From Octopus sinensis (Eukaryota): 26,625 nucleotides of DNA. Of this stretch, positions 3,059 to 20,512 are shown in pieces. A program made the position numbers and the translations under genes. The notes under the pieces were generated by a model. That model made no database searches and was not told the origin of the DNA. It saw only the letters and a program-made list of their open reading frames with translations. Position 1 is the stretch's first letter, and each line of letters starts with the position of its first letter. The stretch spans positions 1-26,625 of the forward strand of contig NW_021834130.1 in assembly GCF_006345805.1 (NCBI RefSeq), read 5' to 3'.

Positions 3059-3214
3059 GTTTCTTTATTGCCCACAAGGGGCTAAACATAGAGGGGACAA
3101 ACAAGAACAGACAAATGGATTAAGTCGATTACATCGACCCCAGTGCGCGTAACTGGTACTTAATTTATCGACCCCCGAAAGGATGAAAGGCAAAGTCGAC
3201 CTCGGCGGAATTTG

Positions 3215-3215
<1 letters not shown>
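3059..3215 (-). mobile_element. SINE B, 5'-truncated, tail type 1
   Basis: reverse complement matches the array unit from tcaaattccgccgagg to aaagaaa. Confidence 0.9.

Positions 3216-3290
<75 letters not shown>
3216..3290 (+). repeat. (TAA)n microsatellite
   Basis: direct reading. Confidence 0.97.
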
Positions 3291-3292
<2 letters not shown>

Positions 3293-3575
3293 TGACAGGT
3301 TAGCTTGGGAGGTTAAGCAGTTGTGGTCGATGAAAATATTGATAGTAGTACCAATAATCGTCGGAACCCTGAGAACAGTGAGTAAAAATCTTGAGAAGTA
3401 CATGGGACAAATACGAGCTGCAATAAGGGTGGAGCACTTGCAGAAAACAGCACTGCTTGGAACCGCTCAAATACTCCGGAAGGTGCTCGAAAAATAAGAG
3501 GTGTTACCTTAGTTCACTGGTAGTGAACAACTGACACTGTAGTACATCTCCAGCGTTAGAAGCTGTGCAAAGGCA
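3291..3575 (+). mobile_element. R4/Dong-like RLE LINE 3' fragment (3'UTR type 1)
   Basis: Frame from 3291: YDRLAWEVKQLWSMKILIVVPIIVGTLRTV...LQKTALLGTAQILRKVLEK* (stop 3495-3497), then 3'UTR ending in aatgataataa. Confidence 0.85.
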
Positions 3576-3600
3576 ATGATAATAATTATTATTAATTAAT

Positions 3601-4140
3601 TTTTAAATGTGACATGGAACAGAGTAACCTTCTCAAAATTGTCCATAGTTTCAGCAAGGACGACGGAATCTGCATGGGGCTGGACAAATGTGCCGAGGTC
3701 ACACTCAGAAGAGGTAAATTAATCAGCACTGAAAACATTGCACTTGGCATAGACACAGAAATTGGAGAATTAGACCACACCCACCCATACATATATCTAG
3801 GAATAGAAGAAACAGCTAAAGTACAACACACAAAAATGAAAGAGAAAATTAAGAGAGAGAATTACAGAAGAGTTAGACTAATATTAAACACTGAAGTCAA
3901 AGCTAAAAATAAGATAATAGGGATAAACACGCTAGCCATACCAGTCGTAAATTACAGCTTCAACATAATAAACTGGAAGATCAGTGGATTAAGAAACCTA
4001 GATAGAAAATCCAGAAAACTTTTAACAGCGTACCGAAGTCAACACACCAAAGCAAACGCAGACAGAACATATCTTTCCCGCTCAGAAGGGGATCGTGGCC
4101 TGACACAAGTAGAGAACTACTATGAAATTACAAAAGTTGG
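3601..4140 (+). mobile_element. R4/Dong-like LINE RT/thumb fragment
   Basis: ORF 3614: FSKDDGICMGLDKCA...YIYLGI...NKIIGINTLAIPVVNYSF..INW..LDRKSRKLL..ADRTYLSRSEGDRGL; lacks YxDD and RLE. Confidence 0.85.
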
Positions 4141-4144
4141 ACAA

Positions 4145-5940
4145 AAAGTTGGAAACAAAAAGTGGAAGACTATTACATATAATAAAGTAACACAGGAAAA
4201 AGAAAACGCGTTTCTCTGTACACAATGAGGTAACAAAATTCGATACAGACAAACTACACTAATGCACTTTCCAAAAGACTGCCAAATACATCTGGCATGA
4301 ACTCACGGGTTTCATAAGACAGATCATCCAAACCGAGCAATTTGCGACTTGTGCAACCGCTCATCGCCCCCTGTATTTTAGCAGCCATTACAGGATTTTC
4401 TCACAACCTCGCGTCTGCTGCTGAGATCACAGGAGGCAACAGTGCGAAGTGCTGTTGCTAAGCCGCACACAACCGAGTAGCTCTCACCCGTCCCGCTTCA
4501 TCAAATACCTGACTTTGGTTTTGTTGCCATGCCATGTCTCTAGCGTTCGAACCCATCGGACGGCTTTTGTTCCTTCGGGTTTGCGCGCAGATGCCTTAGC
4601 TCTGACAATGCAGCTTTCCTATTTCACCTCGTAGAAATGATCAAGGTTAATTTTATCAGTAAAGGTAACACTTCCGCTGTTTCCCACGCCCTGGATCACC
4701 ACCACTTTACCGCCCGGGTCCAAGAAGATTGCCCTATTTGGAGGTCTAAGGATTTTCCTCAATAGCAATGGTACCCCGTTGTCCGATACTGGCAGGCCTC
4801 CGGATGAGAGTATCTCAGTCGTCGAAAATGAACGCCAGTGCTAATGGCAGCTACATCTAAGCCGAGCGACCTAAGATCATTAAGCAAAAGATCTTGCTTC
4901 CAAGCTAACCCCAGGCCACAGACATTCACACACCTCACTTTCAGCACAGCCATGTTAGTCAAAGAAAGAAAGCGGGGAGATAACTCTCCTCGATCTTCGA
5001 GAATCTCGTTTCCGGTCCTCTCTTCTGTCGGAAGTTTTCTAAAAGTTCCTTCTAATTTCTTTTATTTTTATTTTTATTCTGTTTTAAAATCCTCAAAGTA
5101 ACTGACACTCCTTCCCGAACTGTTTTATACAAGTCAGAAGACATTTTTGTTAACATTCTGTCCTCCAGGATTTTAAGAATGAAATCTTCACACACTTCCT
5201 CCACTTCTTAATTTTGTCTTAATTTTTATTTAAGTATTCCATCAAATAACTGTTGCTTTTGTTCGCAACTGTGAAGTTAATGGATACATTTTGTGTACAG
5301 TTTAGATCGTTTTATTGTTTTAGCAGGTTCAGTTTTCGTTGTTGTAGTGTTTGTATTTTCTCTTTATTGTTGTCGTTGATGATGATGATAATGTCGCTGC
5401 TGTTATTGTTGCTGTTGTTGTTGTTGTTATTGTTGATATTGCTGTTGTTACTGGAGTGGTTGTAAAGGTGGGTTGTCTTCTGCTTCTGTTGTTCGTAGCG
5501 GATGACGTGGTTTCATTTCCTTTGTTAAAAACTTTCATCTTCTGTTTGTCTTGAAATATGTTGCTATTGTTGACGCTGATGTCACTGTTTCTGCTGTTGT
5601 TGTTGTTGTTGTTGTGTGCGTCGATATTTTCCATTATCTGTACCTCTTTAAATTTGTTTATGTTGTTGCTGCTGCTTTTGTTGTTGTTGTTATCGTTGTT
5701 GTCGCTGTTGTTGTTGATAACGATGGTGATTTCAATGATTTCTTTGTTGAAATTTTCCGTCTTCTGTTTATTTTACAGCATTACTGTTGGTGAAAGCTGT
5801 CTTGTCGGCTGTTTTCAAAGCGGTGTCATAGCGAGTCCCGTTCCTACCGACTCTCACTGCGTTCTGATAACGCTCCTTCTTTCACAAACGAACCTTCACC
5901 GCGTCGTCTAATGTGTTATCGATGGAGGCAGAAGAGAAAA
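4145..5940 (-). mobile_element. L1/Tx1-like LINE, heavily internally deleted
   Basis: Minus strand: low-complexity ORF1-like region; APE start MAVLKVRCVNVCGLG..LLNDLRSLGLDVAAIS; AIFLDPGGKVVVI; linker KRDG.ELL..CAA*QQHFA; RT-domain-0-like KLLGLDDLSYE..MPDVFG; no RT core. Boundaries approximate. Confidence 0.65.
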
Positions 5941-6159
5941 TCTCATAAACGAAGCAAAATTAAATCGTGATGCCCCAGAAAAACGGGGCACAACACGCGA
6001 AAGGAAACTCACCAGTCAGTACAGAACAACTCGTTTTTTGACAATGGTCTAAATGTCAAAACTGGATGCAACGTTTATCCGTGATTTTTATTTTACAAAA
6101 TATACAGAGCCGAGGTTAAACCTAGCTTGCCCGGCTGACGGCAATAATAATAATAATAA

Positions 6160-6710
6160 TGCCCTGAATCAGTACCAGGCAGTGGCTCTCATGGCTTCTG
6201 ATCTTAACTGATTGGAAGTGTTATCATGTACATTGTTTCGTCTTGGTATAAAAGATGGACTACAGCAAATATTCTGCTCAATACCACAGATTTGCTTGTC
6301 AGTTGTTTGACCTTAACCATTTGACCATGTCCCTTAGTGGCTGACGATATGTGCATCTCTGATCACGAGCAGAAAATAGTGGGGGAGCATCATAGCCATG
6401 TGTTGAGAGGGATTCTTTGGGGTTTGAATAATCACCTCTGGAGACATGGGTGGTTTTTTCAACATCCTTAAACAACCCTTATTCAGGGACCGTTTGAGCG
6501 GGATGGGCTACTCAACTGAAGAAAATTCTAACTGGGCCCACCTGCAAGGTCATGTGCAGTTTATCTTGATATGAGATCACCATGTCGCGCACATATGGTT
6601 GTGATGCATGTGCCTGCTGTACCCTTATCAGACGGATAGTCATGATGGGTATATTGGGCTTCGTATATTTACCCAGTGTCACTTTGATGGCATGCGCTGC
6701 TCTCTCACTC
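6160..6710 (+). mobile_element. unclassified ~550-bp interspersed element D, copy 1
   Basis: Three collinear copies in window, AAT tracts on both sides, no TIR or tRNA head seen; strand inferred. Confidence 0.85.
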
Positions 6711-6776
6711 AATAATAATAATATAATAATAATAATAATATAACAATAATAATAATAATAATAGTAATATAATAAA

Positions 6777-6819
<43 letters not shown>

Positions 6820-6828
6820 TAATAATAA

Positions 6829-6916
<88 letters not shown>
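6711..6916 (+). repeat. (AAT)n tract
   Basis: direct reading. Confidence 0.97.
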
Positions 6917-7115
6917 GACAAAACATAACAAAAACACCAGGACTTACAAAACACATATAGTACAGAAAATTGCACTGCTAGGCACTGCACACATCCTACG
7001 CAGAACACTTTCCATACAATAACCATCAGAGCATCACAACAAATCACAGCACATACCCAAGGCACACAGAGCTGCGCTCGGTAGTGAAGTGAAAGCACGC
7101 TATAAAAATAAACTA

Positions 7116-7117
<2 letters not shown>
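6917..7117 (+). mobile_element. R4/Dong-like LINE 3' end (3'UTR type 2)
   Basis: ..QKIALLGTAHILRRTLSIQ* then 3'UTR ending aaaataaaactatg + (AAT)n; near-identical to 13070-13237. Confidence 0.9.

Positions 7118-7177
<60 letters not shown>
7118..7177 (+). repeat. (AAT)n tract
   Basis: direct reading. Confidence 0.97.
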
Positions 7178-8033
7178 TTCTTTATTAACCACCGATGACT
7201 CATGCAAAAGACTGGGAGCTGTACAGGACGATACACTGAAGCATATAAAACCGGAATAACAATAAGCAAGGGAGGACAAACTTGGGAATGGCCCGGATTG
7301 ACTACCGCAAAGCTTACAATATGATTCCACATTCGTGGATCATTGAGAGCTTAAATTTGTTTGGAATTCCAAGGAATGTAACGCGTTTTCTGAGGAGAAG
7401 TATGGTGAGGTGGAAAATTGTGTTGCCATCGTCAAAGCCTGGGCATCCTGGGTACGAGGAGAGGGATTTTCCAAGGTGATGGCTTATCTCTATTGCTTTT
7501 TGTATGACACCTCTGACCTTGGCACTTTGGAAAATGAACCTGGGATATCAGTTAAAGGGAAAATCTCAAAGAATTGATCACCTCCTCTTCATGGATGATT
7601 TGAAACTGTATGGCAAAGATGAGGTACACATGACCTCCTCCTTGGTGAACACGGCCCATTGTTTTTGTGCTGATATTATAATGGAATTCGAACTTAATAA
7701 GTGTAGTATAATGTGCCTGAAAAGAGGAAAGGTACAGTCCCTGGCAGGGATAAAATTACCTAATAAAGAATTGATAAAACAAGTTGAAAAGGAAGACTAG
7801 AAATACCTTAGCATACAAGAGTTCAACGAAATCATGGAGAATGAAATTAAAGAACAGCTGAGGAAAGAATATTTTCCGAGGACTAGGATTGGTGCTGCGC
7901 TCAAAATTGAATGGATGGAACAAAATCCAAACCGTAATACATGGGTGAAAGCGTGACTTCGGTTTGGAGGTGGGATCATAAACTGGCAAAAGGAAGAACT
8001 GAAGAGCATGGATACGAAAACAAAGAAAATATT

Positions 8034-8260
8034 TCTTTATTGCCCACAAGGGGCTAAACATAGAGGGGACAAACAAGAACAGACAAAGGGATTGAGCCGA
8101 ATACAACGACCCCAGAGTGTAACTGGTACTTATTTAATCGACCCGAAAGGATAACAGGCAAAGTCGACCTCGGCGGAATTTGAACTCAGAACGTAACGGC
8201 AGACGAAATACCCCTAAGCGTTTCGTTCGGTGTGTTAATGATTCTGCCAGCTCGGTGCCT
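8034..8260 (-). mobile_element. SINE B full-length with 14-bp TSD
   Basis: TSD acaaagaaaatatt at 8020-8033 and 8268-8281; removal restores MDTKTKKILAVHRAF. Confidence 0.92.
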
Positions 8261-8879
8261 TCAAAAGACAAAGAAAATATTGGCAGTGCACAGAGCATTC
8301 CGTCCCAAGAGTGGCACTGATAGGTTGTACTTGTCCAGAAGAAAGAGTGGGAGAGGTTTGATCACTTACCAGATTTGTGTAGAAGCAGAAGAAAACAGCT
8401 TAGAGGGACATATAAAAAATGCCGTGGTACCATTACCGAATCATGTGCTGAAGTCTAGTATCATTAAAACTGATAATTGTATAAAGAGAGAAAAACTTTA
8501 AGAGAAGAAGAAACAGCATGGAAAGAGAAAAAATGTGCTATCGGTCTGCAAGAGATACGAACGAAAACAAACAGATACAGAAGACCGGTAGCTATGGATA
8601 CGGAGGAGGGGACAGAGACAAAAGCACTTCTATGCGCAGCGCATGAACAAGCATTGAGACAAACTATATGAAGTGCAGAATTGATAACACAACTGAGAAT
8701 GGCAAATGCAGAATGTGTGGTGAGAGGGATGTAACAATATGGCACATCGTTAGCGAATGCCCGAAATTGGCACAACGCGAATACAAAAGACGACATGACA
8801 ATGTAGCAAGAATGATCCATTGGGAGCTCTGTGGAAATCACAGCCTACAAAGAGCAAAGACGTGGTATGAACAAATTAA

Positions 8880-10208
8880 GGCGGCGAGCTGGCAGAAACA
8901 TTAGCACGCCGGGCGAAATGCTTAGCGGTATTTCGTCTGCGTTACGTTGTGAGTTCAAATTCCGCCGAGGTTGACTTTGCCTTTCATCCTTTCGGAGTCG
9001 ATAAATTAAGTACCAGTTACGCACTGGGGTCGATGTAATCGACTTAATACCTATGTCTGTCCTTGTTTGTCCTCCCTGTGTTTAGCCCCTTGTGGTAGTA
9101 AAGAAATAGTTATTTCGTCTGCCGTTACGTTCTGAGTTCAAATCCGCCGAGGTTGACTTTGCCTTTCATCCTTTCGGAGTCGATAAATTAAGTACCAGTA
9201 CGCACTGGGGTCGATGTAATCGACTTAATACCTATGTCTGTCCTTGTTTGTCCTCCCTGTGTTTAGCCCCTGTGGGTAGTAAAGAAATAGTTATTTCGTC
9301 TGCCGTTACGTTCTGAGTTCAAATTCCGCCGAGGTTGACTTTGCTTTCATCCTTTCGGAGTCGATAAATTAAGTACCAGTTACGCACTGGGGTCGATGTA
9401 ATCGACTTAATACCTATGTCTGTCCTTGTTTGTCCTCCCTGTGTTTAGCCCCTTGTGGGTAGTAAAGAAATAGTTATTTCGTCTGCCGTTACGTTCTGAG
9501 TTCAAATTCCGCCGAGGTTGACTTTGCCTTTCATCCTTTCGGAGTCGATAAATTAAGTACCAGTTACGCACTGGGGTCGATGTAATCGACTTAATACCTA
9601 TGTCTGTCCTTGTTTGTCCTCCCTGTGTTTAGCCCCTTGTGGGTAGTAAAGAAATAGTTATTTCGTCTGCCGTTACGTTCTGAGTTCAAATTCCGCCGAG
9701 GTTGACTTTGCCTTTCATCCTTTCGGAGTCGATAAATTAAGTACCAGTTACGCACTGGGGTCGATGTAATCGACTAACAACCTATGTCTGTCCTTGTTTG
9801 TCCTCCCTGTGTTTAGCCCCTTGTGGGTAGTAAAGAAATAGTTATTTCGTCTGCCGTTACGTTGTGAGTTCAAATTCCGCCGAGGTTGACTTTGCCTTTC
9901 ATCCTTTCGGAGTCGATAAATTAAGTACCAGTTACGCACTGGGGTCGATGTAATCGACTTAACACCTATGTCTGTCCTTGTTTGTCCTCCCTGTGTTTAG
10001 CCCCTTGTGGGTAGTAAAGAAATAGTTATTTCGTCTGCCGTTACGTTGTGAGTTCAAATTCCGCCGAGGTTGACTTTGCCTTTCATCCTTTCGGGGTCGA
10101 TAAATTAAGTACCAGTTACGCACTGGGGTCGATGTAATCGACTTTATACCTATGTCTGTCCTTGTTTGTCCCCTCTGTGTTTAGCCCCTTGTGGGTAATA
10201 AAGAAATA
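8880..10208 (+). mobile_element. SINE B head plus seven ~184-bp headless tandem units, 12-bp TSD
   Basis: Unit starts 8929, 9111, 9292, 9475, 9659, 9843, 10027; TSD ggtatgaacaaa at 8864-8875 and 10209-10220. Confidence 0.95.
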
Positions 10209-10681
10209 GGTATGAACAAACCTCGGAAGGAGTCACCGACAACGAGAATTGCGAAATCCTGTGGGATGCGATGATTCAGTGCGACCATCAGATAAGATAT
10301 CGGAAACCTGATTTTGTGGTGTGTAAAAATGGAAAAATCTTGCATGATAATGGTCGTAACATATCCTAATAACAACAAGATCAAAGAGAAAGACAAAGCA
10401 AAACTGGAAAACTACGATGATTTGAAGTGGGGAGAACGCAGGTTGTGAGCAACGAAGATAGAGGATGTGATACCAATAGGGATTGGCGCGGTTGGAGGCA
10501 TCAGCACTGAACTACCAACATGGTTCAAAAAGATTGGTACAAATCTAAAAATAGAACACCGACAAAAATCTCTGCAGTGTTCTTGAAGCATGATCAGTAA
10601 ACAATATGTCACCTTTGTCACATGGTTGTGGACAGCTGACTATTCTATCAAGCCCAGCAAAATAAGTTGAGAGTTTTCATC

Positions 10682-11470: not shown

Positions 11471-11612
11471 AATAATAATAATAATATTAATAAAAGAATA
11501 ATAATAATATAATAATAATAATACTATACTACTACTAATAATAATAATAATAATATAATAATAATAATAATAATAATAATATTAATAATAATAATAACAA
11601 TAATAATAATAT

Positions 11613-11647
<35 letters not shown>

Positions 11648-11718
11648 TAATAATAATAATAATAATATTAATAATAATAATAATAATAATAATAATGATG
11701 ATGATGATGATGATGATG

Positions 11719-11753
<35 letters not shown>

Positions 11754-11798
11754 TAATAATAATAATAATAACGATAATTATCAATAATAATAATAATA

Positions 11799-11838
<40 letters not shown>

Positions 11839-11918
11839 GATAATAATAATAATAATAATAATAAATAATATAATAATAATAATGATAATAATAATAATAA
11901 TGTATTAACAATAATAAT
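11471..11918 (+). repeat. long degenerate (AAT)n tract
   Basis: direct reading. Confidence 0.95.
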
Positions 11919-12441
11919 TGCCCTATGCAGTACCAGGCAGAGGCTCTCATGGCTTCTGATCTTAACTGATTGGAAGTGCTATCATGTACATTGTTTTGTC
12001 TTGGTATAAAAGATGGGATACAGCAAATATTCTGCTCAACGTCACAGATTTGCTTGTCAGTTGTTTGACCTTAACCTTAACCAGTTGAGCATGTCCCTTG
12101 GTGGCTGACAATATGTGCATCTCTGATAACGATCAGAAATTGTGGGGGAGCATCATAGCCATGTGTTGAGAGGGATTCTTTGGGGTTTGAATAATTAACC
12201 TCTGGAAACATGGGTGTTTCGTTCGACATCCTTAAACGACCCTTATTGAGAAAATTCTAACTGGGCCCCACCTGCAAGGTCATGCGCTGTTTGTCTTGAT
12301 ATGAGATCACCATGTCGCGCACATATGGTTGTGATGAATGTGCCTAGTGTACCCTTATCAGACGGGTAGTTATGATGGGTATACTGGGCTTCGTATATTT
12401 TTACCCAGTGTCACTTTGATGGCATGCATGCTCTCTCACTC
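11919..12441 (+). mobile_element. element D, copy 2
   Basis: collinear with copy 1 from tgccct..gcagtaccaggcag to ctctctcactc; internal deletion near 12245. Confidence 0.85.
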
Positions 12442-12464
12442 AATAAAATAATAATAATAATATC

Positions 12465-12537
<73 letters not shown>

Positions 12538-12625
12538 CAATAAAACAACAACAACAACAGCAGTAATAATAATAATAATGATAATAAAATAATAATAATG
12601 ATAATAATAATAATAATAAATTATT
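12442..12625 (+). repeat. (AAT)n tract
   Basis: direct reading. Confidence 0.95.
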
Positions 12626-12629
12626 ATAA

Positions 12630-13395
<766 letters not shown>

Positions 13396-13923
13396 GCAGA
13401 GATTGAACGATTTTTAATTGCAGTACAAGATCAAAGCCATCCCACCAGAAATCATCAAAAGCACAAAATGAAAAGAAATACAAGTAACTTCAGAATATGT
13501 GGTGATGGAGAAGAAGCAATAAATCATATTGTCACTGGCTGTCCAGTCCTGGCTGAGAAGAAATATGTTCACAGACACGACAGAGTTGAAACTTATATAC
13601 ACTGTAAGCTATGCCAATACTATGGAATAACAAGAGAGAAAAAATGGTATAGGCACACGCCAGAAAGGGTCACAGAAAACGAGGAAGCAACCATATACTG
13701 AGATATTCCAATGCACACAAATATAAAAATTAATACCATTTGACGGATATAGTTGTCAGAGATCACCAAGAAAAATGCTTTCTAATCGATGAATCAATAC
13801 CAACAGATGACAATATTTCTTTAAAAGGAACTCTCAGGCACCGCACACATCCGCCATAAAACATTTCCAATACAGTGAAAATAAGAGCACCACAACAAAC
13901 CACAGCACATACCCAAGGTACAC
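13396..13923 (+). mobile_element. older R4/Dong-like LINE CCHC/RLE fragment with internal deletion
   Basis: FLIAVQDQ..FRICGDGEEAINHIVTGCPVLAEKKYVHRHDRV..; jumps from DDNISLK to GTAHI; partial type 2 UTR. Confidence 0.85.
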
Positions 13924-13924
13924 T

Positions 13925-14426
13925 CATGCAGTAACCAGGCAGTGGCTCTCGTGGCTTCTGATCTTAACTGACTGGAAGTGTTATCATGTACATTGTTTTG
14001 TCTTGGTATAAAAGATGGGCTACAGCAAATATTTTGCTGAATACCACAGATTTGCTTGTCAGTTGTTTGAGCATGACCCTTGAAGAAGTAGTGAGGGAGC
14101 ATTATAGCCATGTGTTGAGAGGAACTCTTTGGGGGTTTGAATAATTCCCCTTTGGAAGCATGAGTGCTTCGTTCAACATCCTTAAACGACCCTTATTCAG
14201 GAACCTTTTGAGCAGGATGGGCTACTCGACCTGAAGAAAATTCTAACTGGGCCCCACCTGCAGCATCATACGCCTCTTATCTTATTATGAGATCACCATG
14301 TAACCCACATATAGATGTGATGCATGTTCCTAGTGTACCCTTATCGGACAGATAGTCATGATGGGTATACTGGGCTTCGTATGTCTTAGCCGTGTCATCT
14401 CGATGGCATGCACTGCACTCTCATTC
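13925..14426 (+). mobile_element. element D, copy 3 (internally deleted)
   Basis: collinear with copies 1 and 2; followed by (AAT)n. Confidence 0.85.
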
Positions 14427-14484
<58 letters not shown>

Positions 14485-14492
14485 TAATAATA
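14427..14492 (+). repeat. (AAT)n tract
   Basis: direct reading. Confidence 0.97.
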
Positions 14493-15507: not shown

Positions 15508-16022
15508 TACATGGAAGTATTGTCCTGCCAAAAATAGTCTACTCAGGAGAAGCTTGGGAAATGACAACCAAGATCACTCAGAGGTTGAACGCGTTCCACT
15601 AACGGTGTCTACACAGAATGCTCAAGATCACTTCCAAGAATAGACCCAGAAATTCTGAAGTCTTGAGAAGATATTTCTTTATTGCCCACAAGGGGCTAAA
15701 CATAGAGGGGACAAACAAGGACAGACAAAGGGATAAAGTCGATTACATCTACCCCAGTGAGTAACTGGTACTTAAATTATCGATCCCGAAAGGATGAAAG
15801 GCAAAGTCGACCTCGGCGGAATTTGAACTCACAACGTAGCGGCAGACGAAATACGGCTACGCATTTCGCCCGGCGCGCTAACGATTCTGCCAGCTCGCCG
15901 AAGAGCCAGTTTGTATAGTCTGCAAGAGATTGTGGTGGAAAGATAGAGGAGACTTTGCATGTCTTGTTTTCTAACTGCCAGAAGAACAAATACTCAGGTC
16001 AACGATACGGGAGAAAATAAGA
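15508..16022 (+). mobile_element. RTE-like LINE C-terminal fragment split by SINE B
   Basis: SIVLPKIVYSGEAWEMTTKITQRLNAFH*RCLHRMLKI..NSEVLRR|ASLYSLQEIVVER after removing SINE and one TSD copy. Confidence 0.75.
15672..15899 (-). mobile_element. SINE B full-length, 5-bp TSD
   Basis: gaaga at 15667-15671 and 15900-15904; removal restores the reading frame. Confidence 0.9.
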
Positions 16023-19929: not shown

Positions 19930-20512
19930 GGCGGTGAGCTGGCAGAAACGTTAGCACAACGGGCGAAATGCTTAGCAGTATTTCGTCTGCTGCTACGTTC
20001 TGAGTTCAAATTCCGCCGAGGTTGACTTTGCCTTTCATCCCTTTGGGGTCGATTAAATAAGTACCAGTTACGCACTGGGGTCGATGCAATCGACTTAATC
20101 CGTTTGTCTGTCCTTCTTTGTCCACTCTGTGTTTAGCCCCTTGTGGGTAGTAAAGAAATAGGTATTTCGTCTACCGCTACGTTCAGAGTTCAAATTCCGC
20201 CGAGGTTGACTTTGCCTTTCATCCTTTCGGGGTCGATAAAATAAGTACCAGCTATGCACTGGAGTCGATATAATCGACTTAATCCGTTTGTCTGTCCTTG
20301 TTTGTCCTCTCTGTGTTTAGACCCTTCTGGGTAGTAAAGAAATAGGTATTTCGTGCGTTCTCACATGATGAGTTCAAATTCCACCGAGGTTGACTTTGCC
20401 TTTCATCCTTACGAGTTCAATCAAATAAGCACCATTTGATTACTGGGGTCGATATAATCGACTTACCGTTCTCCCGAATTTGCTGGTCTCCTTCCAAAAT
20501 TTGAAACCAATA
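19930..20512 (+). mobile_element. SINE B head plus three units, last with tail 3
   Basis: junctions aagaaataggtatttcgt at ~20161 and ~20346. Confidence 0.88.

What the first reader, a model, noticed from the sequence alone, without database searches (positions are those of the whole stretch)
6160..6710. Element D: headless ~550-bp repeat found only in AAT tracts, candidate non-autonomous partner of the Dong-like LINE
Seen: three co-oriented copies (6160, 11919, 13925), all ending in AAT and two starting from AAT; no TIR, no tRNA head, no credible ORF. About 75 nt before the tail each has the hairpin taccc-tt-atcagac-[ggata/gggta/agata]-gtc-a-tgat-gggta (6620-6651, 12350-12381, 14336-14367). 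Stem substitutions in copies 2 (gtc>gtt) and 3 (atca>atcg) give G-U pairs only on the + strand. The GGTAGT loop of copy 2 and a nearby atggttgtg resemble the LINE 3'UTR motif. Inference: a microsatellite-targeted short retroelement transcribed on + and mobilised in trans by the RLE LINE. I cannot tell whether it is already catalogued.
Basis: partly seen in the sequence, partly recalled or inferred. Interest (0 to 1): 0.75.

Follow-up and report, generated by a model that had tools for sequence, protein, structure and literature searches.

The report
Octopus AAT-repeat retroposon riding Dong LINEs
Element D is a real, abundant, gene-less mobile element of about 555 bases in octopus genomes that copies itself almost only into AAT microsatellites, most likely by borrowing the enzymes of the AAT-specific Dong-type LINEs beside it, although it shares no sequence with them.

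Summary
Three co-oriented copies lie at 6160-6710, 11919-12441 and 13922-14425. None has an ORF, a tRNA head or an Rfam match.

The family is large in this 2.7-Gb octopus-type genome:
- 7,131 exact 5' ends, of which 3,823 sit directly after AATAATAA.
- 13,288 exact 3' ends followed by AATAAT, against 226 followed by a non-A base.
- The roughly two-fold excess of 3' ends, extreme 5' truncations and stuttered 5' junctions point to target-primed reverse transcription.

D clusters with Dong/R4-type LINEs. In an unbiased 23.5-Mb sample, 11 of 88 D ends lie within 1 kb of a young Dong 3'UTR (0.7 expected), all on the same strand. Copy 3 is fused, 4 nt from its 5' end, to a truncated Dong 3'UTR.

D is not a LINE fragment. 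A profile search, BLAST and shuffle tests found no similarity to a full-length young Dong or to four LINE tail types.

The hairpin is real and larger than described: 48 nt, 20 bp, z about -4.6, and twice as stable on the + strand. Covariation is not significant. RNA evidence gave no verdict.

This scan has already found the same family on many other pieces of this genome. I read it as a new variant of a known kind, of moderate interest.

The parts
6143..6159 (+). Short (AAT)n tract between the 3' end of the upstream LINE and D copy 1. It serves as landing site and 5' junction.
   Evidence: Sequence read. The same AATAATAA(+0/1 nt) junction precedes 3,823 of 7,131 exact D 5' ends.
6160..6710 (+). 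D copy 1, full length (551 nt), 96.8% identical to the family majority.
6160..6286 (+). First 127 nt of D. In some genomic copies this unit is repeated head to tail with a 128-nt period upstream of a complete element. It is a candidate internal promoter or monomer region (inferred).
   Evidence: The same D[..127]+A+D[1..] junction occurs 13 times at 8 or more loci, in tandem runs of 2-4 (also L006 and L008).
6612..6659 (+). It ends about 50 nt before the AAT tail.
   Evidence: dG -20.9 kcal/mol, z -3.5. A young copy gives -23.0 on the + strand against -11.5 on the - strand.
6711..6916 (+). (AAT)n tail and target tract downstream of copy 1.
   Evidence: 13,288 D 3' ends are followed by AATAAT, against 226 followed by a non-A base.
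11919..12441 (+). D copy 2, 92.4% identical to the majority, with an internal gap of about 36 nt. It is preceded by (AAT)n 11471-11918 and followed by (AAT)n 12442-12619. Its hairpin is at 12342-12389.
12628..13237 (+). 5'-truncated 3' end of the young Dong-type LINE family (95.5% identical), with its own (AAT)n at 13238-13395.
13394..13923 (+). Older 5'-truncated Dong-type LINE fragment covering the CCHC/RLE coding end and part of the 3'UTR. It lacks the last ~58 nt and has no AAT tail. It is fused directly to D copy 3.
   Evidence: 83% and 81% identical to positions 3197-3637 and 3816-3909 of a 3,967-nt full-length copy. The junction is unique in the genome.
13922..14425 (+). D copy 3, about 86% identical to the majority. 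It lacks its first 4 nt and about 55 nt internally. Its hairpin is at 14328-14375 and its (AAT)n tail at 14427-14492.
6899..7117 (+). Last ~220 nt of a young-type Dong LINE (94.5% identical), followed by (AAT)n 7118-7177. It sits in the same array and the same orientation as D.
7282..8904 (+). Degenerate older Dong-like LINE with reverse-transcriptase and C-terminal CCHC zinc-finger ORF pieces.
   Evidence: Weak RVT_1 hits. tblastn to the young Dong ORF: residues 600-856 and 1005-1091. 31,386 first-look candidates in the genome.
3291..6142 (+). Probable further Dong-like LINE remnant whose 3' end abuts the AAT tract before D copy 1. The extent is approximate.
   Evidence: tblastn to the young Dong ORF: residues 719-895 at window 3611-4141, 56% identical. 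Its tail shows no similarity to D.

Best explanation
D is a non-autonomous, non-coding retroposon of about 555 nt. It has neither a Pol III gene-derived head nor a LINE-derived tail. It spreads by target-primed reverse transcription into (AAT)n/(TAA)n microsatellites, using in trans the protein of the AAT-specific, R2-group (RT + CCHC + restriction-like endonuclease) Dong/R4-type LINEs that share those arrays.

Proposed steps:
1. A + strand D RNA ending in (AAU)n is made. The promoter is unknown; it may lie in the first ~127 nt, which is tandemly multiplied in some propagated variants. This step is inferred.
2. The Dong protein nicks an AAT array, and the (AAU)n tail pairs with the nicked strand and is extended. 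Recognition may be helped by the 48-nt hairpin about 50 nt upstream of the tail. This step is inferred.
3. Reverse transcription often stops early or jumps templates at the 5' end. This step is shown by the anatomy of the copies.
4. Each insertion brings a new AAT tail, so arrays grow into co-oriented trains of D and LINE copies. This step is shown.
For: Target and tail:
- 13,288 exact D 3' ends are followed by AATAAT, against 226 followed by a non-A base.
- 3,823 of 7,131 exact 5' ends lie directly after AATAATAA.
- One copy in a mariner-like element has a non-AAT 5' flank but its own AAT tail.

Retroposition signatures:
- 3' ends outnumber 5' ends 1.9-fold.
- Truncated copies start directly after AAT, some retaining only the last ~20 nt.
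- 5' junctions carry stuttered repeats of the first 18-30 nt or internal D pieces.

Link to Dong:
- The neighbouring young LINE has a 1,226-aa open frame with RVT_1 and zf-RVT. It matches solved R2 proteins over residues 457-1207 at E 2e-35.
- That LINE sits between AAT tracts.
- D lies in about 19 of 50 loci that were fetched by LINE match, and is co-oriented with the LINE in 20 of 20 cases.
- In an unbiased 23.5 Mb, 11 of 88 D ends have the LINE 3'UTR within 1 kb (null mean 0.73, maximum 5 in 2,000 trials), all 11 on the same strand.
- Window copy 3 is fused 4 nt from its 5' end to an internal point of a Dong 3'UTR, as an RT template jump would give.

Timing:
- Both families are recently active. 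D copies reach 98-99% identity to the majority, and the LINE copies are 97-99% identical to each other.
- D variant frequencies differ between species.

Strand:
- The hairpin folds at -23 kcal/mol on the + strand (z -4.6) against -11.5 on the - strand.

Background:
- Dong-R4 LINEs are reported as abundant and recently active in Octopus (PMC13282606, PMC9115989).
Against: - No experiment or RNA data show that D is transcribed or that a Dong protein copies it.
- The runs holding D were contigs of uncertain RNA status. D depth per letter read was about the same as in DNA runs.
- D shares no detectable sequence with any sampled Dong 5'UTR, ORF or 3'UTR. The usual shared-tail evidence for a SINE/LINE pair is therefore missing, and the partner is assigned only by target, orientation, proximity and one old fusion.
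- That fusion could also be a later genomic deletion.
- Hairpin covariation is not significant: 4 of 5 family-level stem variants keep pairing, but all are one-sided transitions.
- R2-type enzymes are usually described as needing their own 3'UTR.
Confidence: 0.75

Rival explanations
1. D is a short internally deleted derivative (SIDE-like) of a Dong-type LINE family that I did not sample or that is extinct. On this view its ends are diverged LINE 5' and 3' UTRs, and the LINE protein recognises it through that inherited tail.
For: Earlier notes of this scan (s1-107387, s1-109790, seen) read it this way. R2 SIDEs arise exactly so (PMC3414825). The octopus genome holds many Dong families: 31,386 and 89,019 first-look candidates. 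I compared D with only four tail types and one full-length family.
Against: A profile of 40 D copies finds nothing outside D itself in about 300 kb of Dong-rich loci or in three full-length or near-full-length young copies. Local alignments of the D head and tail against four LINE tails and a 5'UTR are at shuffle level. A genome-wide pattern for the D 3' terminus with a non-D upstream sequence returns only truncated or indel-bearing D copies, not another family.
Confidence: 0.12
2. D is mobilised by a different enzyme, for example an RTE- or CR1-type LINE whose RNA also ends in a microsatellite. Its presence in AAT arrays would then be a by-product of tail-to-target annealing, not of Dong specificity.
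For: An active octopus RTE has a microsatellite-rich 3'UTR (PMC9115989). D lacks any Dong-derived sequence. A few D copies have non-AAT 5' flanks.
Against: APE-type LINEs insert broadly, with target-site duplications. D has AAT on both sides in most copies. It is always oriented like the Dong LINEs, and one copy is fused to a Dong 3'UTR. No other AAT-specific autonomous element appeared in the sampled arrays.
Confidence: 0.06
3. D is not an independent element. It is either the 3' part of a longer element seen as truncated copies, or a sequence spread at the DNA level (microsatellite-associated duplication, Helitron-like transfer).
For: Local tandem runs exist (L029 and C10), and some arrays may have grown by duplication. 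D has a hairpin near its 3' end, as Helitrons do.
Against: 7,131 copies carry the same exact 5' 20-mer, more than half of them directly after AAT, so the 5' end is discrete. Copies lie on all large scaffolds with unrelated outer flanks. The termini are not 5'-TC/CTRR-3', the hairpin lies about 50 nt from the end, and there are no inverted termini. Graded 5' truncation fits reverse transcription.
Confidence: 0.03

Closest known systems
R2 SIDEs (short internally deleted elements) of Drosophila, PMC3414825
   Same: Non-coding, non-autonomous passengers of a site-specific LINE that carries a restriction-like endonuclease. They insert at the LINE's own target in the LINE's orientation.
   Different: SIDEs keep the R2 5' ribozyme and the R2 3'UTR. 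D shows no homology to any sampled Dong UTR and no ribozyme match. Its target is a microsatellite, not rDNA.
Dong (Bombyx mori) and R4-clade LINEs; octopus Dong-R4 families (PMC309301 as cited in PMC9115989; PMC13282606)
   Same: Same target, (TAA)n = (AAT)n. Same orientation and same register at the 3' junction, with element sequence followed directly by AATAAT. Same arrays.
   Different: Dong elements are about 4 kb and encode RT, CCHC and RLE domains. D is about 555 nt, non-coding and unrelated in sequence.
Alu/SVA with L1 (relaxed, tail-only recognition); my own knowledge
   Same: The passenger shares only a simple-repeat 3' tail with the LINE RNA. Like D, SVA has no Pol III head.
   Different: L1 uses an APE endonuclease and poly(A) and inserts genome-wide. 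D has an (AAU)n tail and lands in matching microsatellites, presumably through an RLE enzyme.
UnaSINE1/UnaL2-type pairs with a 3' stem-loop plus terminal short repeats (Kajikawa and Okada 2002; my own knowledge, not checked here)
   Same: A stem-loop some tens of nt upstream of a short tandem repeat at the RNA 3' end is the proposed recognition and priming module.
   Different: In those pairs the stem-loop region is homologous between SINE and LINE, and the SINE has a tRNA head. Neither holds for D.

Membership tests
Non-autonomous non-LTR retroposon (SINE in the broad sense) | No coding capacity | tested here: met
   The longest ORFs are 43-58 aa with no Pfam hit.
Non-autonomous non-LTR retroposon (SINE in the broad sense) | Dispersed high-copy family with discrete ends and a simple-repeat 3' tail | tested here: met
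   7,131 exact 5' ends and 13,288 exact 3' ends followed by AATAAT, on all large scaffolds.
Non-autonomous non-LTR retroposon (SINE in the broad sense) | Signs of target-primed reverse transcription (5' truncation, 5' junction irregularities) | tested here: met
   The ratio of 3' to 5' ends is 1.9. Truncated copies start after AAT. 5' ends show stutters and internal-fragment junctions.
Canonical SINE | Pol III promoter head derived from tRNA, 7SL, 5S or snRNA | tested here: not met
   No tRNA. No Rfam match even at E<=10. A TTTT run near position 78 would stop Pol III.
Canonical SINE / stringent SINE-LINE pair | 3' region homologous to the partner LINE's 3' end | tested here: not met
   nhmmer, BLAST and shuffle-controlled alignment against four Dong tail types and a full-length young Dong found nothing. 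No other family shares the D terminus.
SIDE (internally deleted LINE) | Both ends collinear with the parent LINE's 5' and 3' ends | tested here: not met
   No similarity to the young Dong 5'UTR or 3'UTR. Unsampled families are not excluded.
Dong/R4-clade LINE (for the neighbouring autonomous element, not for D) | Single ORF with RT followed by a CCHC zinc finger and restriction-like endonuclease, inserted in (TAA)n | tested here: met
   A 1,226-aa open frame with RVT_1 and zf-RVT. It aligns to R2 proteins through the C-terminal domain (residues 457-1207, E 2e-35). It is flanked by AAT tracts. No RT phylogeny within the R2 group was made.
Helitron-type non-autonomous element | 5'-TC and 3'-CTRR termini, hairpin 10-20 nt from the 3' end, insertion between A and T | tested here: not met
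   The termini are TGCCC... and ...CACTC. The hairpin ends about 50 nt from the 3' end.
Self-cleaving-ribozyme-headed retroelement (R2-like 5' HDV-type ribozyme) | Ribozyme fold at the exact 5' end | tested here: inconclusive
   No Rfam ribozyme family matched at E<=10. By eye, the first 22 nt form only a simple hairpin. A novel ribozyme is not excluded.

The most novel reading that the evidence does not exclude
D is an independently evolved RNA parasite of an R2-group, restriction-like-endonuclease LINE. It shares nothing with its host LINE except the (AAU)n tail, and possibly a mimicking stem-loop. It carries its own multiplying 128-nt promoter monomer. If so, Dong-type enzymes, unlike the R2 paradigm of strict 3'UTR recognition, accept templates largely by microsatellite tail pairing. 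Successive Dong families could then have served the same passenger across copies that range from about 14% to under 2% divergence.
Probability: 0.3. Interest if true: 0.6.

Novelty: new variant of a known kind. Interest (0 to 1): 0.42.

Why it matters
Passengers of endonuclease-specific (R2-group) LINEs are rare. The described ones (SIDEs) are deletion derivatives that keep the LINE's own ends. D has no LINE-derived sequence, yet by exact-word counts it outnumbers one young partner LINE family (13,288 against 8,328). That suggests template choice in Dong-type elements may rest mainly on the microsatellite tail. This bears on how R2-group enzymes, now of interest as gene-insertion tools, select RNA.

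It also explains part of how AAT arrays in octopus genomes grow into long co-oriented trains of repeats. It gives repeat annotators a classification for what is probably listed as 'unknown' or 'unclassified SINE'.

Tried and rejected
- **Rfam and tRNA.** Rfam at gathering and at E<=10, and ARAGORN, gave no family, tRNA or ribozyme.
- **Homology to LINEs.** I tested D against about 300 kb of Dong-rich loci and three near-full-length young Dong copies with nhmmer, BLAST word 7, Smith-Waterman with shuffles and shared k-mers. All were negative. I therefore rejected 'D is a LINE UTR or fragment' for the sampled families.
- **Shared-terminus lead.** An earlier scan note said a LINE shares the exact 3' terminus. 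A genome-wide pattern search found only D variants: extreme truncations and a 15-nt-deletion subfamily.
- **Second copy of the LINE::D fusion.** The only candidate (C5:58.85 Mb) proved to be a D copy inside a mariner-like element with a chance-similar flank.
- **RNA evidence.** The only runs flagged 'RNA?' are Logan contigs of uncertain type, with D depth per letter like that of DNA runs. This gives no verdict on expression, strand or 5' end.
- **Hairpin covariation.** Family-level variants are few and one-sided, so this is not significant. Variation between individual copies is neutral decay and was not used.
- **Literature.** No paper holds 18-23-nt words of D, and none describes a non-autonomous partner of Dong/R4. 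Dfam and Repbase could not be searched.
- **Limits.** Later genome-wide tests are therefore word counts only.

Full report
**Observation.** The window holds three co-oriented copies of a ~555-nt repeat at 6160-6710, 11919-12441 and 13922-14425.
- All three end in ...CTCACTC followed by (AAT)n.
- Copies 1 and 2 begin directly after (AAT)n.
- Copy 2 lacks about 36 nt and copy 3 about 55 nt internally.
- ARAGORN finds no tRNA. Rfam finds nothing at gathering thresholds or at E<=10. The short ORFs have no Pfam match.

**Size and shape of the family.** The window's own assembly is 2.72 Gb in 13,516 contigs. By its content and the literature it is an octopus genome.
- The DNA search found 7,105 first-look candidates. 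Nearly all 40 scored hits were full length at about 96% identity.
- The first 20 nt of D occur 7,131 times. Of these, 3,823 follow AATAATAA directly, with zero or one extra base.
- The last 15 nt followed by AATAAT occur 13,288 times. The same 15 nt followed by a non-A base occur 226 times.
- Reversed-pattern controls gave 0-3 hits.

D therefore has a discrete 5' end and a 3' end that is almost always continuous with AAT repeats. About twice as many 3' ends as 5' ends survive.

In 82 D hits across 77 fetched loci most full-length copies are flanked by AAT on both sides. 5'-truncated copies start directly after AAT at positions 56, 57, 302 and 422. A pattern search turned up about 25 copies that keep only the last ~20 nt after AAT.

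That test is clearly failed by the alternative, and D passes.

**Retroposition signatures at the 5' end.**
- Several full-length copies are preceded by stuttered repeats of the first 18-30 nt of D (L003, L010, L018, L037, L070).
- Others are preceded by internal D pieces.
- One junction, D[..127]+A+D[1..], recurs exactly 13 times at eight or more loci, in tandem runs with a 128-nt period.

I read the variable stutters as template jumps of the reverse transcriptase at the RNA 5' end. I read the recurrent 128-nt 'monomer' form as a variant that was itself transcribed and copied. That hints at promoter activity within the first ~127 nt. This last point is inference.

One copy sits in a mariner-like element with a non-AAT 5' flank but with its own AAT tail. 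This suggests the tail is part of the RNA.

**The LINEs.**
- Window 7282-8904 carries degenerate RT and CCHC zinc-finger ORF pieces of an old family. That family has 31,386 first-look candidates, 70-84% identical at the protein level.
- Next to a D copy in locus L007 I found a much younger family. It has 89,019 first-look candidates, and all 139 scored hits are 96-98% identical with open frames up to 1,226 aa.
- A full-length copy is 3,967 nt long and lies between AAT tracts.
- Its open frame has RVT_1 and zf-RVT. It aligns to solved R2 proteins over residues 457-1207, E 1.9e-35.

An R2-group enzyme inserted in (TAA)n is the definition of a Dong/R4-type LINE. Dong-R4 families are reported as abundant and recently active in Octopus (PMC13282606; PMC9115989).

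Fragments of the young family lie in the window at 6899-7117, 12628-13237 and 13394-13923, all in D's orientation.

**Is D a piece of a LINE?** No, as far as I could sample.
- An nhmmer profile of 40 full-length D copies found only D itself and its 5' stutters. It was run against about 300 kb of Dong-rich loci and against three full-length or near-full-length young Dong copies.
- BLAST with 7-nt words gave only chance 11-19-mers.
- I aligned the D head and tail by Smith-Waterman against four LINE tail types and the young 5'UTR, with 300 shuffles each. The minimum uncorrected p over ten tests was 0.013, which does not survive correction.
However, four shared 6-mers are expected by chance (P=0.14), and atggttgtg has no counterpart.
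- No other family shares D's terminal 19 nt.

This contradicts two earlier notes of this scan that called D 'tail-derived'. It agrees with another note that found the tail resemblance unconvincing.

**Link between D and Dong.** The link rests on five points:
1. The target is identical and so is the 3' junction register: element sequence, then AATAAT.
2. Orientation: 20 of 20 D copies in loci fetched by LINE match run the same way as the LINE.
3. Proximity: using the tool's first-listed coordinates on scaffold C1 (0-23.5 Mb) as an unbiased sample, 11 of 88 D 3' ends have the young LINE's exact 3'UTR 22-mer within 1 kb. Random placement gives a mean of 0.73 and a maximum of 5 in 2,000 trials. 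All 11 are on the same strand.
4. Both families are recently active. D copies chosen by D match have a median 98.7% identity to the majority. D copies met by chance near LINEs range from 86% to 98%. The window's three copies are at 96.8%, 92.4% and 86.3%.
5. Window copy 3 is a fusion. A 5'-truncated Dong fragment stops 58 nt short of its 3' end, has no AAT tail, and runs straight into D at D's fifth base.

A breakpoint within 4 nt of the D 5' end is what a jump from the end of a D template onto a LINE RNA would give. A later deletion could also produce it, and the junction is unique in the genome. I therefore count it as suggestive only.

**The hairpin.** It is larger than described: 48 nt and 20 bp, at 6612-6659, 12342-12389 and 14328-14375.
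- In a young copy it folds at -23.0 kcal/mol (z -4.55; 1 of 200 shuffles as good). The complementary strand folds at -11.5 kcal/mol, because four pairs are G-U.
- The older copies 2 and 3 keep it intact, at -25.8 and -24.0 kcal/mol.
- Family-level polymorphisms in the stem appear both in the copy alignment and in the read pile-ups of other species. They are 6616 G/A, 6621 A/G, 6624 C/U and 6654 U/C, and all keep pairing. A fifth, 6654 U>A, common in one species, does not.
- All are one-sided transitions, so the pattern is roughly what chance allows.
- The 146-nt 3' region as a whole is not exceptional (z -1.45).

The hairpin supports a + strand RNA. It does not prove a function.

**Other species and RNA.** D words are held by runs of five coded organisms in twelve studies. 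Variant frequencies differ sharply between organisms. For example, 6411 G>A is at 92% in organism C against about 20% in organisms A and E, and 6208 C>T is at 42% against under 2%. Amplification therefore continued after these species split.

The only runs guessed to be RNA are contigs. Their D depth per letter read equals that of DNA runs. I draw no conclusion about expression.

**Mechanism I commit to (about 0.75).**
1. A + strand D RNA ending in (AAU)n is made. Promoter unknown; inferred.
2. A Dong-type protein captures that RNA in trans. The tail pairs with the nicked AAT target and primes cDNA synthesis. Inferred.
3. Synthesis often ends early or jumps templates. Shown by the anatomy of the copies.
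4. The new tail enlarges the target, so D and LINE copies pile up head to tail. Shown.

**Rivals.**
- A SIDE-like origin from an unsampled Dong family: 0.12.
- Use of another LINE's enzyme: 0.06.
- A fragment of a longer element, or DNA-level spread: 0.03.

**Comparison and novelty.**
- The nearest described things are R2 SIDEs (PMC3414825), which keep the LINE's ends.
- Tail-only passengers such as Alu and SVA on L1 are the other close comparison (my own knowledge).
- D fails the canonical SINE tests: no Pol III head and no LINE tail.
- D fails the SIDE test: its ends are not collinear with the parent LINE.
- D passes every test for a non-autonomous TPRT retroposon.
- I found no paper describing a non-autonomous partner of Dong/R4, and none holding D sequence words. 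The 2026 O. vulgaris annotation lists 893 'unclassified SINE' and 58 'unknown' recently active families, where D may already sit unnamed.
- This scan has met the same family on at least a dozen other pieces of this genome.

Noticed in passing
window 8929-10213, 19978-20465; inverted copies at 15672-15900 and 8020-8262: A 184-bp unit is repeated head to tail seven times at 97% match and again 2.7 times 10 kb away, with inverted copies elsewhere. The unit contains a tRNA-T-arm-like GGTTCAAATTCC motif, so it looks like a tandemly arrayed SINE inserted into the old Dong-like LINE.
   Followed up: no
window 13394-13923 joined to 13922-14425: A Dong LINE fragment lacking its last ~58 nt and its AAT tail is fused to D four bases from D's 5' end. 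The LINE part also lacks about 178 nt internally. The junction is unique in the genome.
   Followed up: yes
G000:C2:179955192-179955603 (also C10:35706049-35706206, C23:14556117-14556274): The first 127 nt of D plus one A are repeated with a 128-nt period up to four times upstream of a D copy. The same junction occurs at 8 or more loci. This resembles the promoter monomers of some LINE 5' UTRs.
   Followed up: partly
L003 1400-1500, L018 1390-1500, L010, L037, L070 (5' flanks of D): Stuttered tandem repeats of the first 18-30 nt of D lie between the AAT tract and the complete element.
   Followed up: partly
L077 (G000:C5:58847200-58850300, minus strand): A D copy lies inside a mariner-like transposase remnant. 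Its 5' flank is not AAT and 8 nt are missing, but it has its own AAT tail. Part of the mariner sequence appears to be missing at the site.
   Followed up: partly
genome-wide, e.g. G000:C3:73387851, C5:36918675: A D subfamily (about 25 exact hits) has a 15-nt deletion near the 3' end between two CAC triplets (...GTGTCAC|TGCTCTC...).
   Followed up: no
L009, L023, L077, just after the AAT tail of D: A recurring sequence starting ...ACAACATCGAAAAATA... follows D's tail in 3 of about 40 loci. It resembles a stretch of the young Dong 5' UTR, so it is probably a 5'-truncated LINE of a related family.
   Followed up: no
L015 (C12440) and L018 (C9527): These two loci on different small contigs are reverse-complement duplicates of each other, including the D 5' stutter. 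They are likely uncollapsed haplotigs or an assembly duplication.
   Followed up: no
window 12628-13237: A young-type Dong 3' fragment (95.5% identical) has a ~30-nt deletion that removes the predicted 3'UTR stem-loop containing GGTAGT, yet keeps the terminal 30 nt and the AAT tail.
   Followed up: no
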